Assembly: GCA_013416795.1 (NCBI GenBank)
Contig: RQSC01000032.1
Coordinates: forward strand, 580,036 to 644,035
DNA length: 64,000 nucleotides
Source: Prasinococcaceae sp. CCMP 1430
Taxonomy: Eukaryota > Plantae > Prasinodermophyta
Direction of reading: 5' to 3'
Shown here: positions 28,091 to 57,480 of the stretch, in pieces
Position numbering within the stretch: the first letter of the stretch is position 1
Layout: every line of letters begins with the position of its first letter
Made by a program: the position numbers and the translations under genes
Notes under the pieces: model-generated
What the model was told of the DNA's origin: nothing
The model's input: the letters and a program-made list of their open reading frames with translations, nothing else
Database searches by the model: none

Positions 28091-28593
28091 NNNNNNNNNN
28101 NNNNNNNNNNNNNNNNNNNNNNNNNNNNNNNNNNNNNNNNNNNNNNNNNNNNNNNNNNNNNNNNNNNNNNNNNNNNNNNNNNNNNNNNNNNNNNNNNNNN
28201 NNNNNNNNNNNNNNNNNNNNNNNNNNNNNNNNNNNNNNNNNNNNNNNNNNNNNNNNNNNNNNNNNNNNNNNNNNNNNNNNNNNNNNNNNNNNNNNNNNNN
28301 NNNNNNNNNNNNNNNNNNNNNNNNNNNNNNNNNNNNNNNNNNNNNNNNNNNNNNNNNNNNNNNNNNNNNNNNNNNNNNNNNNNNNNNNNNNNNNNNNNNN
28401 NNNNNNNNNNNNNNNNNNNNNNNNNNNNNNNNNNNNNNNNNNNNNNNNNNNNNNNNNNNNNNNNNNNNNNNNNNNNNNNNNNNNNNNNNNNNNNNNNNNN
28501 NNNNNNNNNNNNNNNNNNNNNNNNNNNNNNNNNNNNNNNNNNNNNNNNNNNNNNNNNNNNNNNNNNNNNNNNNNNNNNNNNNNNNNNNNNNNN
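28091..28593. other. Assembly gap (N run)
   Basis: Continuous Ns. Confidence 1.
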
Positions 28594-35270: not shown

Positions 35271-36032
35271 NNNNNNNNNNNNNNNNNNNNNNNNNNNNNN
35301 NNNNNNNNNNNNNNNNNNNNNNNNNNNNNNNNNNNNNNNNNNNNNNNNNNNNNNNNNNNNNNNNNNNNNNNNNNNNNNNNNNNNNNNNNNNNNNNNNNNN
35401 NNNNNNNNNNNNNNNNNNNNNNNNNNNNNNNNNNNNNNNNNNNNNNNNNNNNNNNNNNNNNNNNNNNNNNNNNNNNNNNNNNNNNNNNNNNNNNNNNNNN
35501 NNNNNNNNNNNNNNNNNNNNNNNNNNNNNNNNNNNNNNNNNNNNNNNNNNNNNNNNNNNNNNNNNNNNNNNNNNNNNNNNNNNNNNNNNNNNNNNNNNNN
35601 NNNNNNNNNNNNNNNNNNNNNNNNNNNNNNNNNNNNNNNNNNNNNNNNNNNNNNNNNNNNNNNNNNNNNNNNNNNNNNNNNNNNNNNNNNNNNNNNNNNN
35701 NNNNNNNNNNNNNNNNNNNNNNNNNNNNNNNNNNNNNNNNNNNNNNNNNNNNNNNNNNNNNNNNNNNNNNNNNNNNNNNNNNNNNNNNNNNNNNNNNNNN
35801 NNNNNNNNNNNNNNNNNNNNNNNNNNNNNNNNNNNNNNNNNNNNNNNNNNNNNNNNNNNNNNNNNNNNNNNNNNNNNNNNNNNNNNNNNNNNNNNNNNNN
35901 NNNNNNNNNNNNNNNNNNNNNNNNNNNNNNNNNNNNNNNNNNNNNNNNNNNNNNNNNNNNNNNNNNNNNNNNNNNNNNNNNNNNNNNNNNNNNNNNNNNN
36001 NNNNNNNNNNNNNNNNNNNNNNNNNNNNNNNN
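35271..36032. other. Assembly gap (N run)
   Basis: Continuous Ns. Confidence 1.
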
Positions 36033-51881: not shown

Positions 51882-52025
51882 GGCATTTGCCAATCCAGTA
51901 AACGACTCCTCACACGTTCTGCACGCGCACCGCGTGTCGCCGCGCCTCCTCGGCGACGGGCGGCGTCGAGCGCCACAGCGCCGGCGGTGTGCATTGCGCA
52001 GCCACGCGGCCGACGCCCCGCTGTG

Positions 52026-54114
52026 ATGGGCCTCGACAGTGCGCCGCCCGGGGAGGGCGGTCGTGGGCGCGGGGGCCGCGGGCGCGGAGGTGCCGCCGCC
52101 GACGGCATGGACTTTGACGTCGAGCGCGAGGCGTCGCTCGCCGCGGCCGAGGCGTTCGGCGGCGCGGTCGCCAGCGGCCACTGCGCGCTGGTGGGCCGGC
52201 CAAACGCCGGCAAGAGCTCGCTGCTCAACGCCGCCCTCGGGGCCAAGCTCTCAATCGTCACGCACAAGGCGCAGACGACGCGAAACTCGGTGCTCGGCAT
52301 CTACGACGACGACGACGCGCAGGTCGTCTTCGTCGACACGCCGGGCGTGCTGCGCCGCGAGGCGGACCTTCTGGACTCGCGCATGAACAGCTACGTGTCG
52401 CGCGCTCTGCGCGACGCCGACGTCGCGGTGTGCATCGTCGACGCAGCCGACGCAGCCGGCGTCGACTTCCGCGACGCCGCCGGCATTCGGCGCCATCGCA
52501 ACGACCGCGGCGGGCGCGGAGGGCGCGGGGGGCGCGGAGGCCGCGGAGGCCGCGGGCGCAGAGGCCGCGGGCGCGGGAGCCGAGCTGATGTTGCCTCCGC
52601 TGCGAATGTCACCGCTGCCTCGACCGTGACACGCGCAGCCGCGACTGCAAGCCCTGCTCCGCCTGCCGTGCATGATTGGAGCGGTCTGCCCGCCTCCACT
52701 GATGACATCGTCGCCGCGCTCGCTGCGCTCGGCGATGCCGCAAGGGACGCGTCTGCGGCTCCTGTCGATCTCCCGGGCGTGCTGCAGCTTCCCGCGCCTG
52801 GTACCGTGCGCCCCCCTGGCACGCGCGCCGAGCTCATTCGGAGGGGCTTTCACACGGAAAAGGCAATCGCCGCGGCCAACGATGGCGAGCTGGCCGGCAG
52901 CGCAGATGCCCGCGCCAAAGCCGACGAGCACCAAAGCGGCCGTTCCGCGCGCGAGCCGCTGCGCGTGGTTCTCCGCGCTGCAGGCCACACCTTCCGCGCG
53001 CAGCAGGCTTCCCCTTCTGAGGGCCCGGCACGCCCAGTCCAGGAGGCGGTATATCGCGGGGCGCTCGCGTGGCTCGAGCAGCGCGGGCGCGCGCACCTGC
53101 GCGGCGATGAGCCGTGCGTACGCCTGCCGCCCCCGCAGCTACCGGCGTGGCCCGCGCCTGCTGCGGTCTCACCATGGGCCGGAGTCGGCAACGCGCAAAT
53201 CCTGCTCCTGGACTGGGACGACGGTGTGTTGCGCGGTCTTCCTGCTGGTGGCAGCGTAGCCGCCGGCGGCGGCGATTCCGCACTGCGGTCGTGGCTCGCC
53301 GGGTTGCCGCCCGGCGCGCCAATCGCGCTCGATGCCGAGTGGCGCTGGGACCACGCGCTGCGAACCCACCGGGGCGCCGCGCTGCTGCAACTCGCACCGC
53401 TCGACGAGCGGCTAGCACCACCGATCCTCATCCACATACGCCAGTGGACGTGCGAGGGAAGGCCACTCAGGCCGTTCCCGTCCGACCTGGTCGAAGCGCT
53501 GCTTGCGAGGCAGTGCGTCGTGTGGGGCGCCGGGAAGCCAGGGACGGGCGATAGGAAACACGTTGCGCGCACACTCGGCGTAGACGAAGACGCGGGGCGA
53601 CGAGCCAGCGGCACCGACGACCTCACAAGGCAGCTCGCAGGTCTGACCACGGACGACAGTGCGGGTGCTCCATCTCGGGACCCCTTTGGCTGGCTCGAGG
53701 CGCAGGAACTCGTACACGTGCGATACCCAGCGCTCAAGGGGCCGCAGGGTGGGGGCACCGGCATCGGACTGGCGGCCGCCGCGCGCATGTTGTTGGGCGT
53801 GGACCCGCCGAAAGACGCCTCCATGCGCAAACGCGACTGGTCAAAGCAGCTGGACGAGAGCGCCGCATACTACGCTGCGCTCGACGCGGTTCTCATTGGT
53901 GAGGATGGCATGCGGTGTGCGCCAGGGAGCGCGCCGCTCAGGCGCTCGCGCGCGCTCGCAGCGAGTGCCTATGAAAGCGGCTGCTGGCTAACCCGGCGCT
54001 CTCGCCTGCACCCGCGCTCTCGGAACCACCGTTGCAGGGCGCATCTTGAGCGCCATGCTCCGCGACAAGGAGCACGTGCCCCTCCGCGGAACGCCCTGGC
54101 CCGCGCAGGCGTGA
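52026..54114 (+). CDS. ORF joining an Era-like GTPase N-terminal half, an RGG tract and a DEDD 3'-5' exonuclease-like domain
   Basis: [10 protein letters not shown] (G1), AQTTRN (G2), FVDTPG (G3). Later [24 protein letters not shown] and DW...YAALDA. Intron 53899-54037. Confidence 0.7.
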
Positions 54115-54303: not shown

Positions 54304-56303
54304 TCAGCGCTTCAGCCCCTCCAGCTTCACAGCCGGCTCATACGGGCTCGGGATGACCACCTTCAGGGCCGGATCGAGCTTTCCGAGCGCGGCGTATATC
54401 GCCGGCATGGGCGGCGGCTTGATAGCCGGCTCGGGGATGTCTCGCACTGTCCGGGCACCCGCCGCCAGCGCAGACGCGCACGTCAGCGCGCGAGCGCGCG
54501 AGGGGTGCGCGAGGGGATCCGGGCGTGCCCCCGGGCACCCACGCGCCTGGCCTGGGGTCCTCGGCGCCCCTGTGCGCGTGCGCTCCGCGCGGACCGCGCG
54601 AACACAGCTGCGCGCACGCACCATACGCGATCTTTCCGTCCTGGTCCAGCTCATAGAAGGAGATGCCCTTGACCCTGCGCGCGCCCTCGCCCATGCCCAG
54701 GTCCACCTCCCAGCAGAACGCACACGCGCTTTCGCCGTCCGAAACGCGCTCGACGACGAACGTGAGCCCCGGGATGTCGAACTCGCGCAGGAACGCCTCA
54801 ACGGCCGCCTTTCCTAGGAAGGGCTGCTCGTAGTTGAAGTCCTCGTAGCGGACTCCGTCGGAGAAGAAACGCACGCTCTCGTCCACGACGCTCGCGCCCG
54901 AGCCCTGCACGTCGCACCACAGGTAGCGCACGACGTCCGAGCAGGCCGTCGGAGTGCGGCGTTCGAGCGCCCCTGCGGGCCTCGCGTCTGCGGTGCCCCC
55001 GTCGCCCGCCTGCTTCTCAGCAATGGCCTTGAGCAGCTTGGCGGTGGCTTCCCCGGGCTTGAAGAGCGGCTCAACGCCGACGCGCACGTACTGTATGCGT
55101 CCCTGGTCGTCGACCTCCAAGTAGAGCGTGCCGCGCAGGCCGCGGCCCGACACGCCCTCGCGTGCGCGGTGGAAGGTGAAGCCCGAAGCCCGCTCGCCGT
55201 CGGCGATGCGCTCGATGGCGATCGTGGCGCCGTTGCGCTCGTCCTCGGCCTGCGCCGCGGCGAGGTGGGCGTACACCGCCTGCGACCCCCTGAGGGGCTC
55301 TTCGAGGCTCATGTCCTCCCACACGACGTCGGGCGCGCACGCTGCGGCCACGCGGCCGGCGTCCCACGCGCCGCACTCGATGCAGTCGCACCACTCACCG
55401 CCGCCGTCGCTGCAGAAGGTGCGTCGGATGCGCTCGTCCGCGCGCGACACGTCGGGCGCCGCGGGCAGGACGAAGGGCAGCGCACTGCTGCCGCCGGACC
55501 CCTCGGCGCCCTGCCCGCCGTCCCACTCAGGCGGCGGAAGGCCCTTGCCGCTGAGCATGCACATCGTCAGGTGAAGCAGAAGGCCCTTGGAGGCGCGCGA
55601 GAGGCGTTGTGAGCGAAAGGCCGCAGGGGGCAGGGGGGGGGCGGGGGGCAGCCGCGTCAGCGCATCGAGCGCGCGCGCAGGCGCCGCCGCCGCCGCGCGC
55701 CCGGGGCGCGCGCTCTCACCGGCGGACCCGTGAAGTTCGTGAGCAGCACGCTCGCCCGGACGAGCGGCACGTCCCTCCTGACGGCATCCAGCCAAACCCA
55801 TCGTCCAACGAAGAGGTCCCACGCAAGCACGTGCGCCCACTCCTCCGTGACGAAGTTGGGGTTCTCCAGCATGGACTGGAAGCTCTCGAGGGGCACGTTG
55901 CGGAGCGCGCCTTCGGCCGAGAAGACGCCCGCGAACTTGGCGAGCTCCTCCGTTGCGTTGGGCTGGCCGAAGCCAATGGCGTCCACCCAGAAGTGGACGC
56001 CCGCGCACGCGATCGGGAACCACAGCGGCGTCATGAGCGCGCGCGTGACCGCTGCGCGCGGCGCGACCGTCATGAGCGTCCACGGCAGCTGCGGGAAGAA
56101 TGTGGCAACGCTGAACGCCAGCGAGATCTCGGGCAGCACGCCCGGCGGCGCGACGACCCCCAACGCGTCCGCGAGGTTCGCCGCACGCGGCGCGGCGCGG
56201 CGCGGTGCGTGCGCCGGCCGCCTCCACCACGCGCCGCGCGCCGCGCCGCCGCCGCGAACGCACCCTTGACGGGCTTGCCGACCTTATCGAAGAGCGACGG
56301 CAT
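54304..56303 (-). CDS. ABA4/DUF4281 membrane domain fused to two SnoaL/NTF2-like domains
   Basis: EWAHVLAWDLFVGRWVWLD...TGPP|GLLLH (ABA4). WED...P..G and RYEDFNYEQPFLG, KGISFY and VRDIPEP (SnoaL). Introns 55586-55719 and 54447-54621 are in frame. The 5' start needs a frameshift or an unseen intron. Confidence 0.85.
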
Positions 56304-56899
56304 GGCTGCTTGGGGGGGGGGAGGGTGAGCGTGCGTACCGGGCGGGCGTGGCGCGCACTGTGCCCCGCGCGCCCGGCACAGTGCGATTCTTCGCCCCGGC
56401 TGCGCTCCGCTCCGCCACGCCGCGCCTGCGACCGCCCGCCCCCCTCTCGCCCGCCCCCCCCGGGCGACGTGTGGCGCGCGCGCGCCGCGCCGCTGCCATC
56501 ATTTCGGATCGCGTGGCGCGGCGAGGCGCCACCGGTCGGCCAGTAGTTATTCAGCAGTGCATCCGCGGGCGCGTACCCGTACACCCCGCACCCGACGGAC
56601 GGGCACCAGCCGCGGCGCCCCGATCGGAGCAGGTCCCCGCAGCGCGCGCGGAGCGAGCGAGCCCGAAACCGAGACCTGAAACCCTCTGCGGCCGCGGCCA
56701 ACCAACCAAAATCCAAACTGCGCGAGCGCGATGCCGCGACCGCATTCGCGGGGTGCGCTGCCTGTGCCTGAAAGGGCGGCGCGAACGTGCCGACCAAACC
56801 TGAATCTGAGAATCTCCTGAATCGTGCTGATCATGTTTGTCACGCCCAATCGCGCTCGCGCCGCAGCGCGCGCCGCGCGAGAGGCGGGAGGACGCAGCA

Positions 56900-57031
56900 G
56901 TACGAGGGCGGGTGCTGGCGCCACACGCCGCGTACGCAGACGCCTTCGGCGACGCCGCGCCGACGGCCGCGGCGTTCGCCGACGCCTTCAGGTGCGTGAG
57001 AGCGCGGGACAGCGTGTGTGTGTGCGTGTGC

Positions 57032-57062
<31 letters not shown>

Positions 57063-57480
57063 CGCATGTGTGTGTGTGCGCATGTGTGTGTGCGTGTGCG
57101 CATGTGTGTGTGCGCATGTGTGTGTGTGTGTGTACGTGCGCGTGTGTGTGTCTGCGTGTGCGTATGCGTATGCATGTGCGTGCATGTGTGTGTGTGTGTG
57201 TGTACGCGTGTGCGTGTGTCTACGTGTGTGTTTTGAAGTCTGTGCACGTCCGTGCGTGTGTGTACGCGCGCGCGCGTGTGCGCGTGCGAGCGCGCTGACA
57301 ACCCGATGCGGCGCCCCCCGCCCCCCCGGCGCTCCTGACCTTCAGGGCGGACGCCGACGGCGCCACCGAGGCGCTCATCGGCGGCCTGGGCGCCGCGCGC
57401 TGGGAGGACTTCCAGCGCGAGGCGCACGCGCTCAAGCTGCGCGCGGACGAGGCGGAGGCGAGGGCGGAGGCGTCGCCGCC
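56900..57480 (+). CDS. Hypothetical gene fragment containing a microsatellite-filled intron (56991-57343)
   Basis: TTCAG|GTGCGT donor and CTGAC...TTCAG| acceptor give the continuous frame AAFADAFR|ADADGATEALIGGLG...WEDFQREAH. Confidence 0.5.
57011..57290. repeat. Compound (TG)n/(CG)n microsatellite, intronic
   Basis: Directly visible. Confidence 0.95.

What the first reader, a model, noticed from the sequence alone, without database searches (positions are those of the whole stretch)
54304..56303. ABA4 neoxanthin-biosynthesis domain fused to two SnoaL/NTF2-like domains
Seen: the ABA4 signature (WxHxLAWDLFVGRW...GPxGLLxH) is completed across a canonical phase-0 intron and continues without a stop into two tandem SnoaL-like domains, the second ending across another in-frame intron. 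The splice support makes a mis-join unlikely. Known: plant ABA4 is a stand-alone plastid membrane protein needed for neoxanthin formation from the epoxy-carotenoid violaxanthin, and the NTF2/SnoaL fold includes ketosteroid isomerases and epoxide hydrolases/cyclases. Inference: a candidate multi-domain carotenoid-modifying enzyme, possibly for lineage-specific xanthophylls, or a pointer to ABA4's partner protein. I cannot tell from here whether the fusion is already reported in other algae.
Basis: partly seen in the sequence, partly recalled or inferred. Interest (0 to 1): 0.7.

Follow-up and report, generated by a model that had tools for sequence, protein, structure and literature searches.

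The report
ABA4-like membrane domain fused to two NTF2 domains
A green picoalga gene really does join an ABA4-like plastid membrane domain (the family needed for neoxanthin in plants) to two ketosteroid-isomerase-like domains, and the same parts occur as separate genes in diatoms, so the soluble part is a testable candidate partner for still-unassigned xanthophyll steps.

Summary
The window is Prasinoderma coloniale. The gene lies on the minus strand and is the annotated model PRCOL_00005254 (P0001, 486 aa, 100% identical).

Confirmed:
- An ABA4-like domain (PF14108, E 3e-27) runs across a phase-0 GT-AG intron into two SnoaL_2/NTF2 domains.
- The second NTF2 domain finishes across a phase-1 GT-AG intron.
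- The stop codon is at 54304.

Not confirmed: the ATG at 56303 is in a different frame from the ABA4 exon, so the 5' end is open. The annotated start at 56073 cuts off the first membrane helix.

The fusion is real. Relatives encode it as one uninterrupted reading frame in marine metagenome contigs. It occurs in Pycnococcus, in unnamed green picoeukaryotes, and in algae with bipartite plastid signals. In diatoms the two halves are separate genes.

The second NTF2 domain matches ketosteroid isomerase (Z 14). The tandem pair matches the two-domain polyether epoxide hydrolases Lsd19 and MonB best. Both domains keep an invariant Asp at the position of the isomerase's catalytic base.

My best reading is a membrane-anchored acid/base enzyme acting on epoxy or allenic xanthophyll end groups. 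This is inferred, not shown. I found no land-plant relative and no paper on this architecture.

The parts
54304..54446 (-). Last coding exon. It holds the end of the second NTF2 domain ('V RDIPEPAIKPPP...') and a C-terminal helix, with the stop TGA at 54306-54304.
   Evidence: Translation; tblastn of P0036 residues 451-488; it matches residues 440-486 of P0001.
54447..54621 (-). Intron 2: 175 nt, GTGCGT...ACAG, phase 1. The split codon G|TG encodes Val440.
   Evidence: Sequence. Uninterrupted relatives read 'IAYVRDIPEP' across the junction.
54622..55585 (-). Large exon. It holds the end of the last ABA4 helix plus the invariant 'SGKGLPP' junction (55532-55585), NTF2 domain 1 (about 55004-55447, Asp209 codon 55315-55313), and most of NTF2 domain 2 (54622-54952, Asp367 codon 54841-54839).
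   Evidence: AF2 model, (pLDDT above 90 over both cones).
55586..55719 (-). Intron 1: 134 nt, GTGAGA...CCAAG, phase 0. It splits the ABA4 motif 'GPP|GLL'.
   Evidence: Sequence. Relatives read 'NFTGPPGLLL' without a break.
55720..56220 (-). ABA4-like exon: membrane helices 1-3 and the start of helix 4, plus a presequence-like stretch. The motif 'EEWAHVLAWDLFVGRW' has its His codon at 55833-55831. Coding in this frame is supported up to about 56220.
   Evidence: Pfam PF14108. tblastn places P0006 residues 1-145 at 56154-55720, and the first-exon peptide of relative L001 at 56220-56080. GC by codon position is 0.66/0.49/0.91.
56221..56303 (-). Unresolved 5' end. The ATG at 56303-56301 opens 'MPSLFDKVGKPVKG...' with coding-like codon usage, but in another frame. 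A TAA sits in the ABA4 frame at 56286-56284.
56339..56502 (-). Alternative first exon, weakly supported. An ATGATG at 56502 lies in the ABA4 frame. It would need a 117-nt GT-AG intron at 56338-56222.
   Evidence: There is no codon-position GC periodicity here (0.80/0.83/0.85), which argues against it.

Best explanation
One nuclear gene of Prasinoderma coloniale encodes a plastid protein with two parts. The first is a four-helix ABA4-like membrane domain. The second, joined through the invariant 'SGKGLPP' junction, is a tandem pair of NTF2-fold domains of the ketosteroid-isomerase / limonene-epoxide-hydrolase type.

Proposed mechanism (inferred): the membrane domain takes a xanthophyll from the bilayer and presents one end group at the membrane surface. 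The hydrophobic cone of an NTF2 domain then carries out a cofactor-free acid/base rearrangement. The invariant Asp (Asp209 in domain 1, Asp367 in domain 2) would act as the proton-shuttling base. Conserved Tyr, Ser/Thr, Asn and Arg residues would polarise the oxygen.

Chemically suitable reactions are:
- opening of a 5,6-epoxide to an allenic or allylic alcohol (violaxanthin to neoxanthin, or the 6-hydroxy gamma-end group of prasinoxanthin-type pigments);
- a neighbouring isomerisation or dehydration of the allenic end group.

Shown here: the architecture, its conservation, the folds, and the conserved Asp positions. Inferred: the substrate, the catalysis and the topology.
For: Gene model and domains.

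The fusion is a single uninterrupted reading frame in relatives: P0036 in Tara scaffolds L001-L004, P0047 and P0130. Eleven full-length fusions align colinearly with an invariant junction.

Folds:
- The AF2 model has pLDDT 83.5 and pTM 0.73, with both cones above 90.
- The top Foldseek hits are the two-domain polyether epoxide hydrolases Lsd19 and MonBI-MonBII (E about 1e-10).
- Domain 2 matches ketosteroid isomerase at Z 14, rmsd about 3 A over 115 residues.
- Profile-to-PDB alignments put the invariant Asp of both domains on the isomerase's Asp38. Limonene epoxide hydrolase is the best hit of domain 1.
- The Asp, the Y-x-D-x-N motif and other polar residues are invariant in both fused and free modules.

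Split forms in diatoms, both with plastid signals.

Literature: the diatom DUF4281 homologue affects fucoxanthin synthesis (Shen 2022, as cited in PMC9499517). Plant ABA4 is needed for neoxanthin but has no shown activity (PMC8770946; PMC12317632). The neoxanthin dehydratase, the 9'-isomerase and the prasinoxanthin enzymes are still unknown (PMC11857680).
Against: There is no expression, localisation or enzyme data.

Sequence matches to solved enzymes are marginal (E 0.02-0.1).

The isomerase triad is incomplete. Asp99 is replaced by Thr271 or Ser427. Tyr14 is Leu in domain 1. In domain 2 Tyr339 lies only next to that position.

The Lsd19 match has low TM (0.33) and rmsd 17 A, so the way the two domains pack differs.

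I could not inspect model coordinates, so pocket geometry and the interface with the membrane domain are unknown.

The NTF2 fold also serves as a plain ligand binder.

DUF4281 proteins also occur in what look like bacterial, cyanobacterium-type forms (P0117, P0119, P0120; no names on record), so the family may not be specific to epoxy-carotenoids.

The ABA4-like fold has no informative solved relative.
Confidence: 0.45

Rival explanations
1. The NTF2 pair is not an enzyme but a carotenoid-binding or facilitator module. It would take a xanthophyll from the ABA4-like domain and hand it on, for example to light-harvesting proteins or to another enzyme. Alternatively it would steer the product of a partner enzyme.
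For: The NTF2 fold is a common small-molecule binder. An NTF2-like protein (FoTO1) steers the product of a membrane P450 in taxane synthesis without shown catalysis (PMC11580873). The C-terminal domain of the orange carotenoid protein is an NTF2-fold carotenoid binder (my own knowledge, not tested here). The isomerase triad is incomplete. Plant ABA4, NSY and NXD1 give no neoxanthin in E. coli (PMC12317632).
Against: An Asp buried at the catalytic-base position is invariant in both domains across fused and free clades, together with a Y-x-D-x-N motif and a conserved Arg. That pattern is more typical of enzymes. The nearest solved structures are enzymes.
Confidence: 0.3
2. The protein acts on another plastid lipid, such as a prenylquinone, sterol-like compound or apocarotenoid, and not on xanthophyll end groups.
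For: PF14108 includes short forms that look bacterial (P0117, P0119, P0120). The free two-SnoaL module is also found fused to glutaredoxin, DUF1499 or EF-hand domains, which hints at wider roles.
Against: The only functional data for this family concern carotenoids: plant aba4 mutants and the diatom DUF4281 protein. All named carriers are algae. The ones I can place from my own knowledge make violaxanthin-derived pigments.
Confidence: 0.15
3. The fusion is an annotation or assembly artefact that joins two neighbouring genes.
For: This is a draft assembly with N gaps, and the 5' end of the gene is inconsistent.
Against: Relatives carry both parts in one uninterrupted reading frame on independent metagenome contigs. 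The junction 'SGKGLPP' lies inside a single exon of the window. Intron 1 splits the ABA4 domain itself, not the domain boundary.
Confidence: 0.02

Closest known systems
Plant ABA4 (At1g67080; Pfam PF14108 ABA4-like / DUF4281)
   Same: It belongs to the same Pfam family (95.8 bits). It has four membrane helices and the shared His...Asp-Leu-Phe and Gly-Pro-x-Gly-Leu motifs.
   Different: Plant ABA4 is a stand-alone protein of about 220 aa. Here the domain carries two NTF2 domains. Its nearest stand-alone relatives are diatom DUF4281 proteins (43-48% identity). Orthology to plant ABA4 was not tested, because no plant sequence was at hand.
Diatom DUF4281 / ABA4 homologue (Phaeodactylum; Shen et al. 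2022, Algal Res 65:102728)
   Same: It is in the same subfamily in the tree (support 96). Most of the aligned diatom proteins still end in the 'GKGLP' junction motif. They are plastid-targeted.
   Different: In diatoms it is a separate gene, and the fusion-type two-SnoaL module is encoded elsewhere (Corethron P0142). I did not have the Phaeodactylum sequence itself.
Lsd19 and MonBI-MonBII polyether epoxide hydrolases (PDB 3rga, 4rzm, 9kw6)
   Same: They have two NTF2-fold domains acting together on epoxides of a lipophilic chain. They are the best Foldseek matches (E about 1e-10).
   Different: Identity is 15-18%, TM is 0.3 and rmsd is 17 A, so the domain packing differs. They are bacterial and soluble, with no membrane domain. 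Their catalytic pairs were not compared.
Ketosteroid isomerase (Comamonas testosteroni; PDB 8cho, 6uae)
   Same: Domain 2 superposes at Z 14 over 115 residues. The invariant Asp of both domains aligns with the catalytic base Asp38.
   Different: Asp99 is Ser or Thr here. Tyr14 is not matched in domain 1 and only approximately in domain 2. The isomerase is a homodimer of single domains, not a tandem.
VDL1, the algal neoxanthin synthase (violaxanthin de-epoxidase-like)
   Same: It carries out the kind of reaction proposed here, violaxanthin to neoxanthin (PMC9499517).
   Different: It is an unrelated lipocalin-type protein. It is reported absent from algae with primary plastids, so green algae still lack an assigned enzyme.

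Membership tests
ABA4-like / DUF4281 (PF14108) | Match to the family profile above the curated cut-off | tested here: met
   95.8 bits against a cut-off of 27, covering profile positions 2-121 of 127, from the first exon alone.
ABA4-like / DUF4281 (PF14108) | Four-helix membrane core with conserved His, Asp and Gly-Pro motifs | tested here: met
   The AF2 model of relative P0036:1-160 has pLDDT 94.8. His99, Asp104, Asp114, Gly134 and Pro135 are invariant across fused, diatom and bacterial-type members. The window sequence is colinear with it.
ABA4-like / DUF4281 (PF14108) | Orthology to plant ABA4 and a requirement for neoxanthin | not tested
   No plant ABA4 sequence could be brought in by reference, and there are no functional data.
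SnoaL_2 / NTF2-like superfamily (PF12680) | Profile match and alpha+beta cone fold, present twice | tested here: met
   60.8 bits in two stretches. The model shows two cones with pLDDT above 90. Domain 2 reaches Z 14 to ketosteroid isomerase.
Ketosteroid isomerase | Catalytic Tyr14, Asp38 and Asp99 | tested here: not met
   The Asp38 position is kept (Asp209, Asp367). Asp99 is Thr271 or Ser427. Tyr14 is Leu in domain 1. In domain 2, Tyr339 is adjacent to the Tyr14 position only by residue counting.
Limonene-1,2-epoxide hydrolase | Tyr53/Asn55 water-holding pair and the Asp-Arg-Asp triad | tested here: inconclusive
   Domain 1 aligns to PDB 5aif at E 0.018. It has Trp at the Tyr position and Asp at the Asn position. 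I infer that domain 2 has Tyr365 and Asp367 at these positions, from the parallel 'W-E-D' and 'Y-E-D' motifs. The Asp-Arg-Asp triad was not covered by the alignment.
Lsd19/MonB tandem epoxide hydrolase-cyclases | Two NTF2 domains in one functional unit with acid/base pairs | tested here: inconclusive
   The tandem architecture is shared and these are the best Foldseek hits, but TM is 0.33 and rmsd 17 A. Catalytic residues were not compared.

The most novel reading that the evidence does not exclude
The fused NTF2 pair is the missing catalytic subunit of ABA4-type xanthophyll enzymes. In green picoalgae the fusion would be the neoxanthin synthase, or the epoxide-opening enzyme of the prasinoxanthin branch. 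In diatoms and their relatives the split pair would be one of the still-unassigned steps, for example neoxanthin to diadinoxanthin. ABA4-like proteins in general would then work as membrane substrate-presenting partners.
Probability: 0.15. Interest if true: 0.85.

Novelty: new variant of a known kind. Interest (0 to 1): 0.6.

Why it matters
Several steps of xanthophyll synthesis have no assigned enzyme:
- how plants and green algae make neoxanthin;
- which enzyme gives the 9'-cis form;
- which dehydratase makes diadinoxanthin;
- how prasinoxanthin arises (PMC11857680).

ABA4 is genetically required in plants but has no demonstrated activity.

A conserved fusion, and in diatoms a split, of an ABA4-like domain with an enzyme-like NTF2 pair gives a concrete, cloneable candidate partner. 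It also gives point mutants to test (Asp209, Asp367). In addition, the family fits the known pattern of carotenoid genes shared between prasinophytes and algae with red complex plastids (Frommolt 2008, cited).

Tried and rejected
- **RNA evidence.** The mRNA and its 5' end are unverified.
- **Other DNA copies of the 5' end.** The two Tara contigs with near-identical sequence stop at window positions 56199 and 56029. An exact 30-mer scan of JGI metagenomes found nothing.
- **Joining ATG 56303 to the ABA4 frame.** No GT-AG intron of normal size works. Only a 38-nt GT...AG interval (56259-56222) restores the frame. The other introns of this gene are 134 and 175 nt.
- **NXD1 as the fused partner.** Rejected, because it is reported as cytosolic (PMC8770946). 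Its sequence was not compared.
- **Land-plant relatives of the SnoaL module.** None appeared among the named hits or nearest clusters in the profile search of 1.8 billion proteins (564 hits; the best 150 listed, without names), the word search, or the Atlas.
- **Solved relatives of the ABA4 fold.** Only generic helix bundles turned up (Foldseek E above 1; VIA Z 8).
- **Pigment correlation.** Not possible, because most carriers are unnamed metagenome contigs.
- **Joined spliced protein.** I did not type or build it. Exons were searched by reference. Whole-protein work used the stored database copy P0001.

Full report
**What is there**

The window has about 70% G+C and contains two N gaps and four single Ns. 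The finding lies on the minus strand. A protein search with the large exon returned a 100% identical database protein, eukprot PRCOL_00005254-RA (P0001, 486 aa). That protein carries both PF14108 and PF12680, which identifies the organism as Prasinoderma coloniale.

**Gene model**

Reading the minus strand and translating the pieces gives this layout:

| Piece | Coordinates | Notes |
|---|---|---|
| ABA4-like exon | ends at 55720 | ends '...LLTNFTGPP' |
| Intron 1 | 55719-55586 | 134 nt, GTGAGA...AAG, phase 0 |
| Large exon | 55585-54622 | 'GLLLHLTMCMLSGKGLPP', a linker, then both SnoaL domains |
| Intron 2 | 54621-54447 | 175 nt, GTGCGT...ACAG, phase 1 |
| Last exon | 54446-54304 | TGA at 54306-54304 |

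- Pfam scores the first exon at 95.8 bits for ABA4-like. It scores the large exon at 60.8 bits for SnoaL_2, in two stretches.
- The piece lengths add up exactly to P0001.
- tblastn of two relatives whose genes have no intron at these places breaks at the same coordinates.
- Codon-position G+C is 0.66/0.49/0.91 in the exons and flat in the introns.

**The 5' end is not as stated**

- The ATG at 56303 is in a different frame from the ABA4 exon.
- The annotated model instead starts at an internal Met (56073). This removes the first membrane helix, which all relatives have.
- A 68%-identical relative from Tara Oceans scaffolds (L001) has an upstream exon encoding 'MACLQARRAAPLLARPRPRARARAPRRLCASAGVVAPEGVLP'. 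A 254-nt intron follows, and then 'EMSLLF...'.
- The window encodes the colinear 'RPAHAPRRAAPRAANLADALGVVAPPGVLPEISLAF' without interruption in the ABA4 frame, from 56220 downwards.
- Upstream of that, the ABA4 frame meets a TAA at 56286-56284.

There are three possible readings of the start:

1. ATG 56303 is the true start, and the draft sequence has a one-base error between 56262 and 56221. In favour: 'MPSLFDKVGKPVKG' has coding-like codon usage, and the assembly has single Ns and gaps.
2. There is a 38-nt GT...AG intron at 56259-56222. This would give a presequence of nearly the same length as in the relative. It is far shorter than the other introns.
3. There is an upstream ATGATG at 56502, with a 117-nt intron at 56338-56222. 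Against this, the stretch shows no coding periodicity.

I rank them in that order, but I cannot decide between them. The independent contigs stop short of the region. A metagenome scan found nothing.

**The fusion is real and conserved**

- Eleven full-length proteins from at least eight 90%-identity clusters align colinearly over both parts. Their junction 'SG[KR]GLP' is invariant.
- P0036, P0047 and P0130 are each encoded by a single uninterrupted reading frame. They lie on gene-dense marine metagenome contigs from many samples.
- The named carriers are P. coloniale and Pycnococcus provasolii.
- An ESM Atlas cluster of 65 ABA4-like proteins, mostly Chlorophyta, matches the tandem in shape.
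- Four further fusion clusters (P0024, P0128, P0129, P0132) begin with a signal peptide followed by an 'AF'-type motif. From my own knowledge, this marks algae with complex red plastids.

**Split forms**

- The closest stand-alone relatives of the ABA4-like domain are diatom proteins from Thalassiosira, Cyclotella and Fragilaria, and a protein from the raphidophyte Chattonella. They are 43-48% identical and carry signal peptides with 'SAFAP'-like motifs.
- Most of these proteins end a few residues after the same 'GKGLP' motif.
- In a tree of the ABA4 domains they fall in one well-supported subfamily with the fused forms (support 96). They sit unresolved next to the red-lineage fusions.
- In a tree of the two-SnoaL modules, all fusions form one side of a branch with support 99. 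Three other sequences sit on that side. Two are truncated fusions. The third is a complete stand-alone transcript of the diatom Corethron hystrix.
- The other side holds 22 free two-SnoaL proteins. This free type includes proteins from Aureococcus. Named relatives from Chrysophaeum, Prymnesium and Chaetoceros also turned up in the searches but were not placed in the tree.
- Some free modules carry glutaredoxin, DUF1499 or EF-hand domains instead.

This is a classic fused/split pattern. It argues that the two parts work together.

**Folds and residues**

- The AF2 model of P0001 has mean pLDDT 83.5 and pTM 0.73. It shows two alpha+beta cones at residues 194-289 and 333-444.
- The best Foldseek matches are the two-domain polyether epoxide hydrolases Lsd19 and MonBI-MonBII (E about 1e-10). 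TM is low at 0.33, so the packing differs.
- Ketosteroid isomerases follow. Domain 2 superposes on them at Z 14, rmsd about 3 A, over 115 residues.
- Profiles of each domain against PDB sequences give marginal E-values (0.02-0.04) but consistent alignments:
  - The invariant Asp of domain 1 (Asp209, 'VVWED') and of domain 2 (Asp367, 'YEDFNY') falls on the isomerase's base Asp38.
  - The isomerase's Asp99 is Thr271 or Ser427 here.
  - Limonene epoxide hydrolase is the best hit of domain 1.
- These residues are invariant in both the fused and the free clades.
- The ABA4-like domain, modelled on relative P0036 at pLDDT 94.8, is a compact helical bundle with no informative solved relative.
- I could not read model coordinates, so pocket and interface geometry are untested.

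**Interpretation**

Established knowledge from papers:

- Plant aba4 mutants lack neoxanthin, but no activity has been shown for ABA4 (PMC8770946; PMC12317632).
- The algal neoxanthin synthase VDL1 is absent from algae with primary plastids. The diatom ABA4 homologue influences carotenoid synthesis without being tied to neoxanthin (PMC9499517).
- The neoxanthin dehydratase, the 9'-isomerase and the prasinoxanthin enzymes are unknown (PMC11857680).

The reactions in question are cofactor-free proton shifts with epoxide opening or water loss. That is the chemistry NTF2-fold enzymes perform.

- My best reading (about 0.45) is a membrane-anchored acid/base enzyme for xanthophyll end groups.
- A non-catalytic binding or product-steering role is the main rival (about 0.3). 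The NTF2-like FoTO1 of taxane synthesis is a precedent for it (PMC11580873).
- A non-carotenoid lipid substrate remains possible (about 0.15).

**Novelty**

- Full-text searches found no paper that mentions ABA4 or DUF4281 together with SnoaL or NTF2. None links NTF2-fold proteins to diadinoxanthin.
- The proteins are present in public databases only as 'DUF4281 domain-containing' or 'hypothetical'.
- No land-plant relative of the SnoaL module was seen. However, most hits are unnamed.
- I therefore rate it a new variant of known kinds, and of moderate to good interest as a testable lead.

- The joined spliced protein was never typed or assembled. Exons were searched by reference. Whole-protein steps used the stored database protein P0001.
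- No sequence here resembled human DNA.
I took it only as a reason to keep an assembly error in mind for the 5' end.

Noticed in passing
window 28091-28593 and 35271-36032; single Ns at 614, 3634, 7830, 61708: There are two scaffold gaps (503 and 762 N) and four single Ns, so the window is draft-quality sequence. This bears on the frame problem at the 5' end of the gene.
   Followed up: partly
window 57013-57288: A long imperfect (TG/CG)n microsatellite lies about 700 nt upstream of the gene. It creates long spurious reading frames on both strands.
   Followed up: no
window 51987-54113 (+ strand): A convergent neighbour gene ends about 190 nt from the stop of the ABA4 fusion gene. Its translation looks like an Era-type GTPase N-terminus followed by an exonuclease-like region (my impression only). 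It has a probable intron near 53900-54037.
   Followed up: no
P0121, P0016 (glutaredoxin), P0122 (DUF1499), P0173 (EF-hand): The free two-SnoaL module occurs fused to a C-terminal glutaredoxin, DUF1499 or EF-hand domain in other marine algae. This hints at redox or calcium control of the same module.
   Followed up: partly
P0277 (Chloropicon roscoffensis), P0224 (Chromera velia), P0246 (Hemiselmis virescens): These are single-domain relatives of NTF2 domain 2 that keep the Y-E-D motif. The Chloropicon protein has a hydrophobic C-terminal tail that could be its own membrane anchor.
   Followed up: no
L001 332-458 and 459-712: The relative's gene is annotated as starting at 'MSLLF'. In fact it has an upstream exon encoding a transit-peptide-like sequence, followed by a 254-nt intron. 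The stored protein P0036 is therefore N-terminally truncated.
   Followed up: yes
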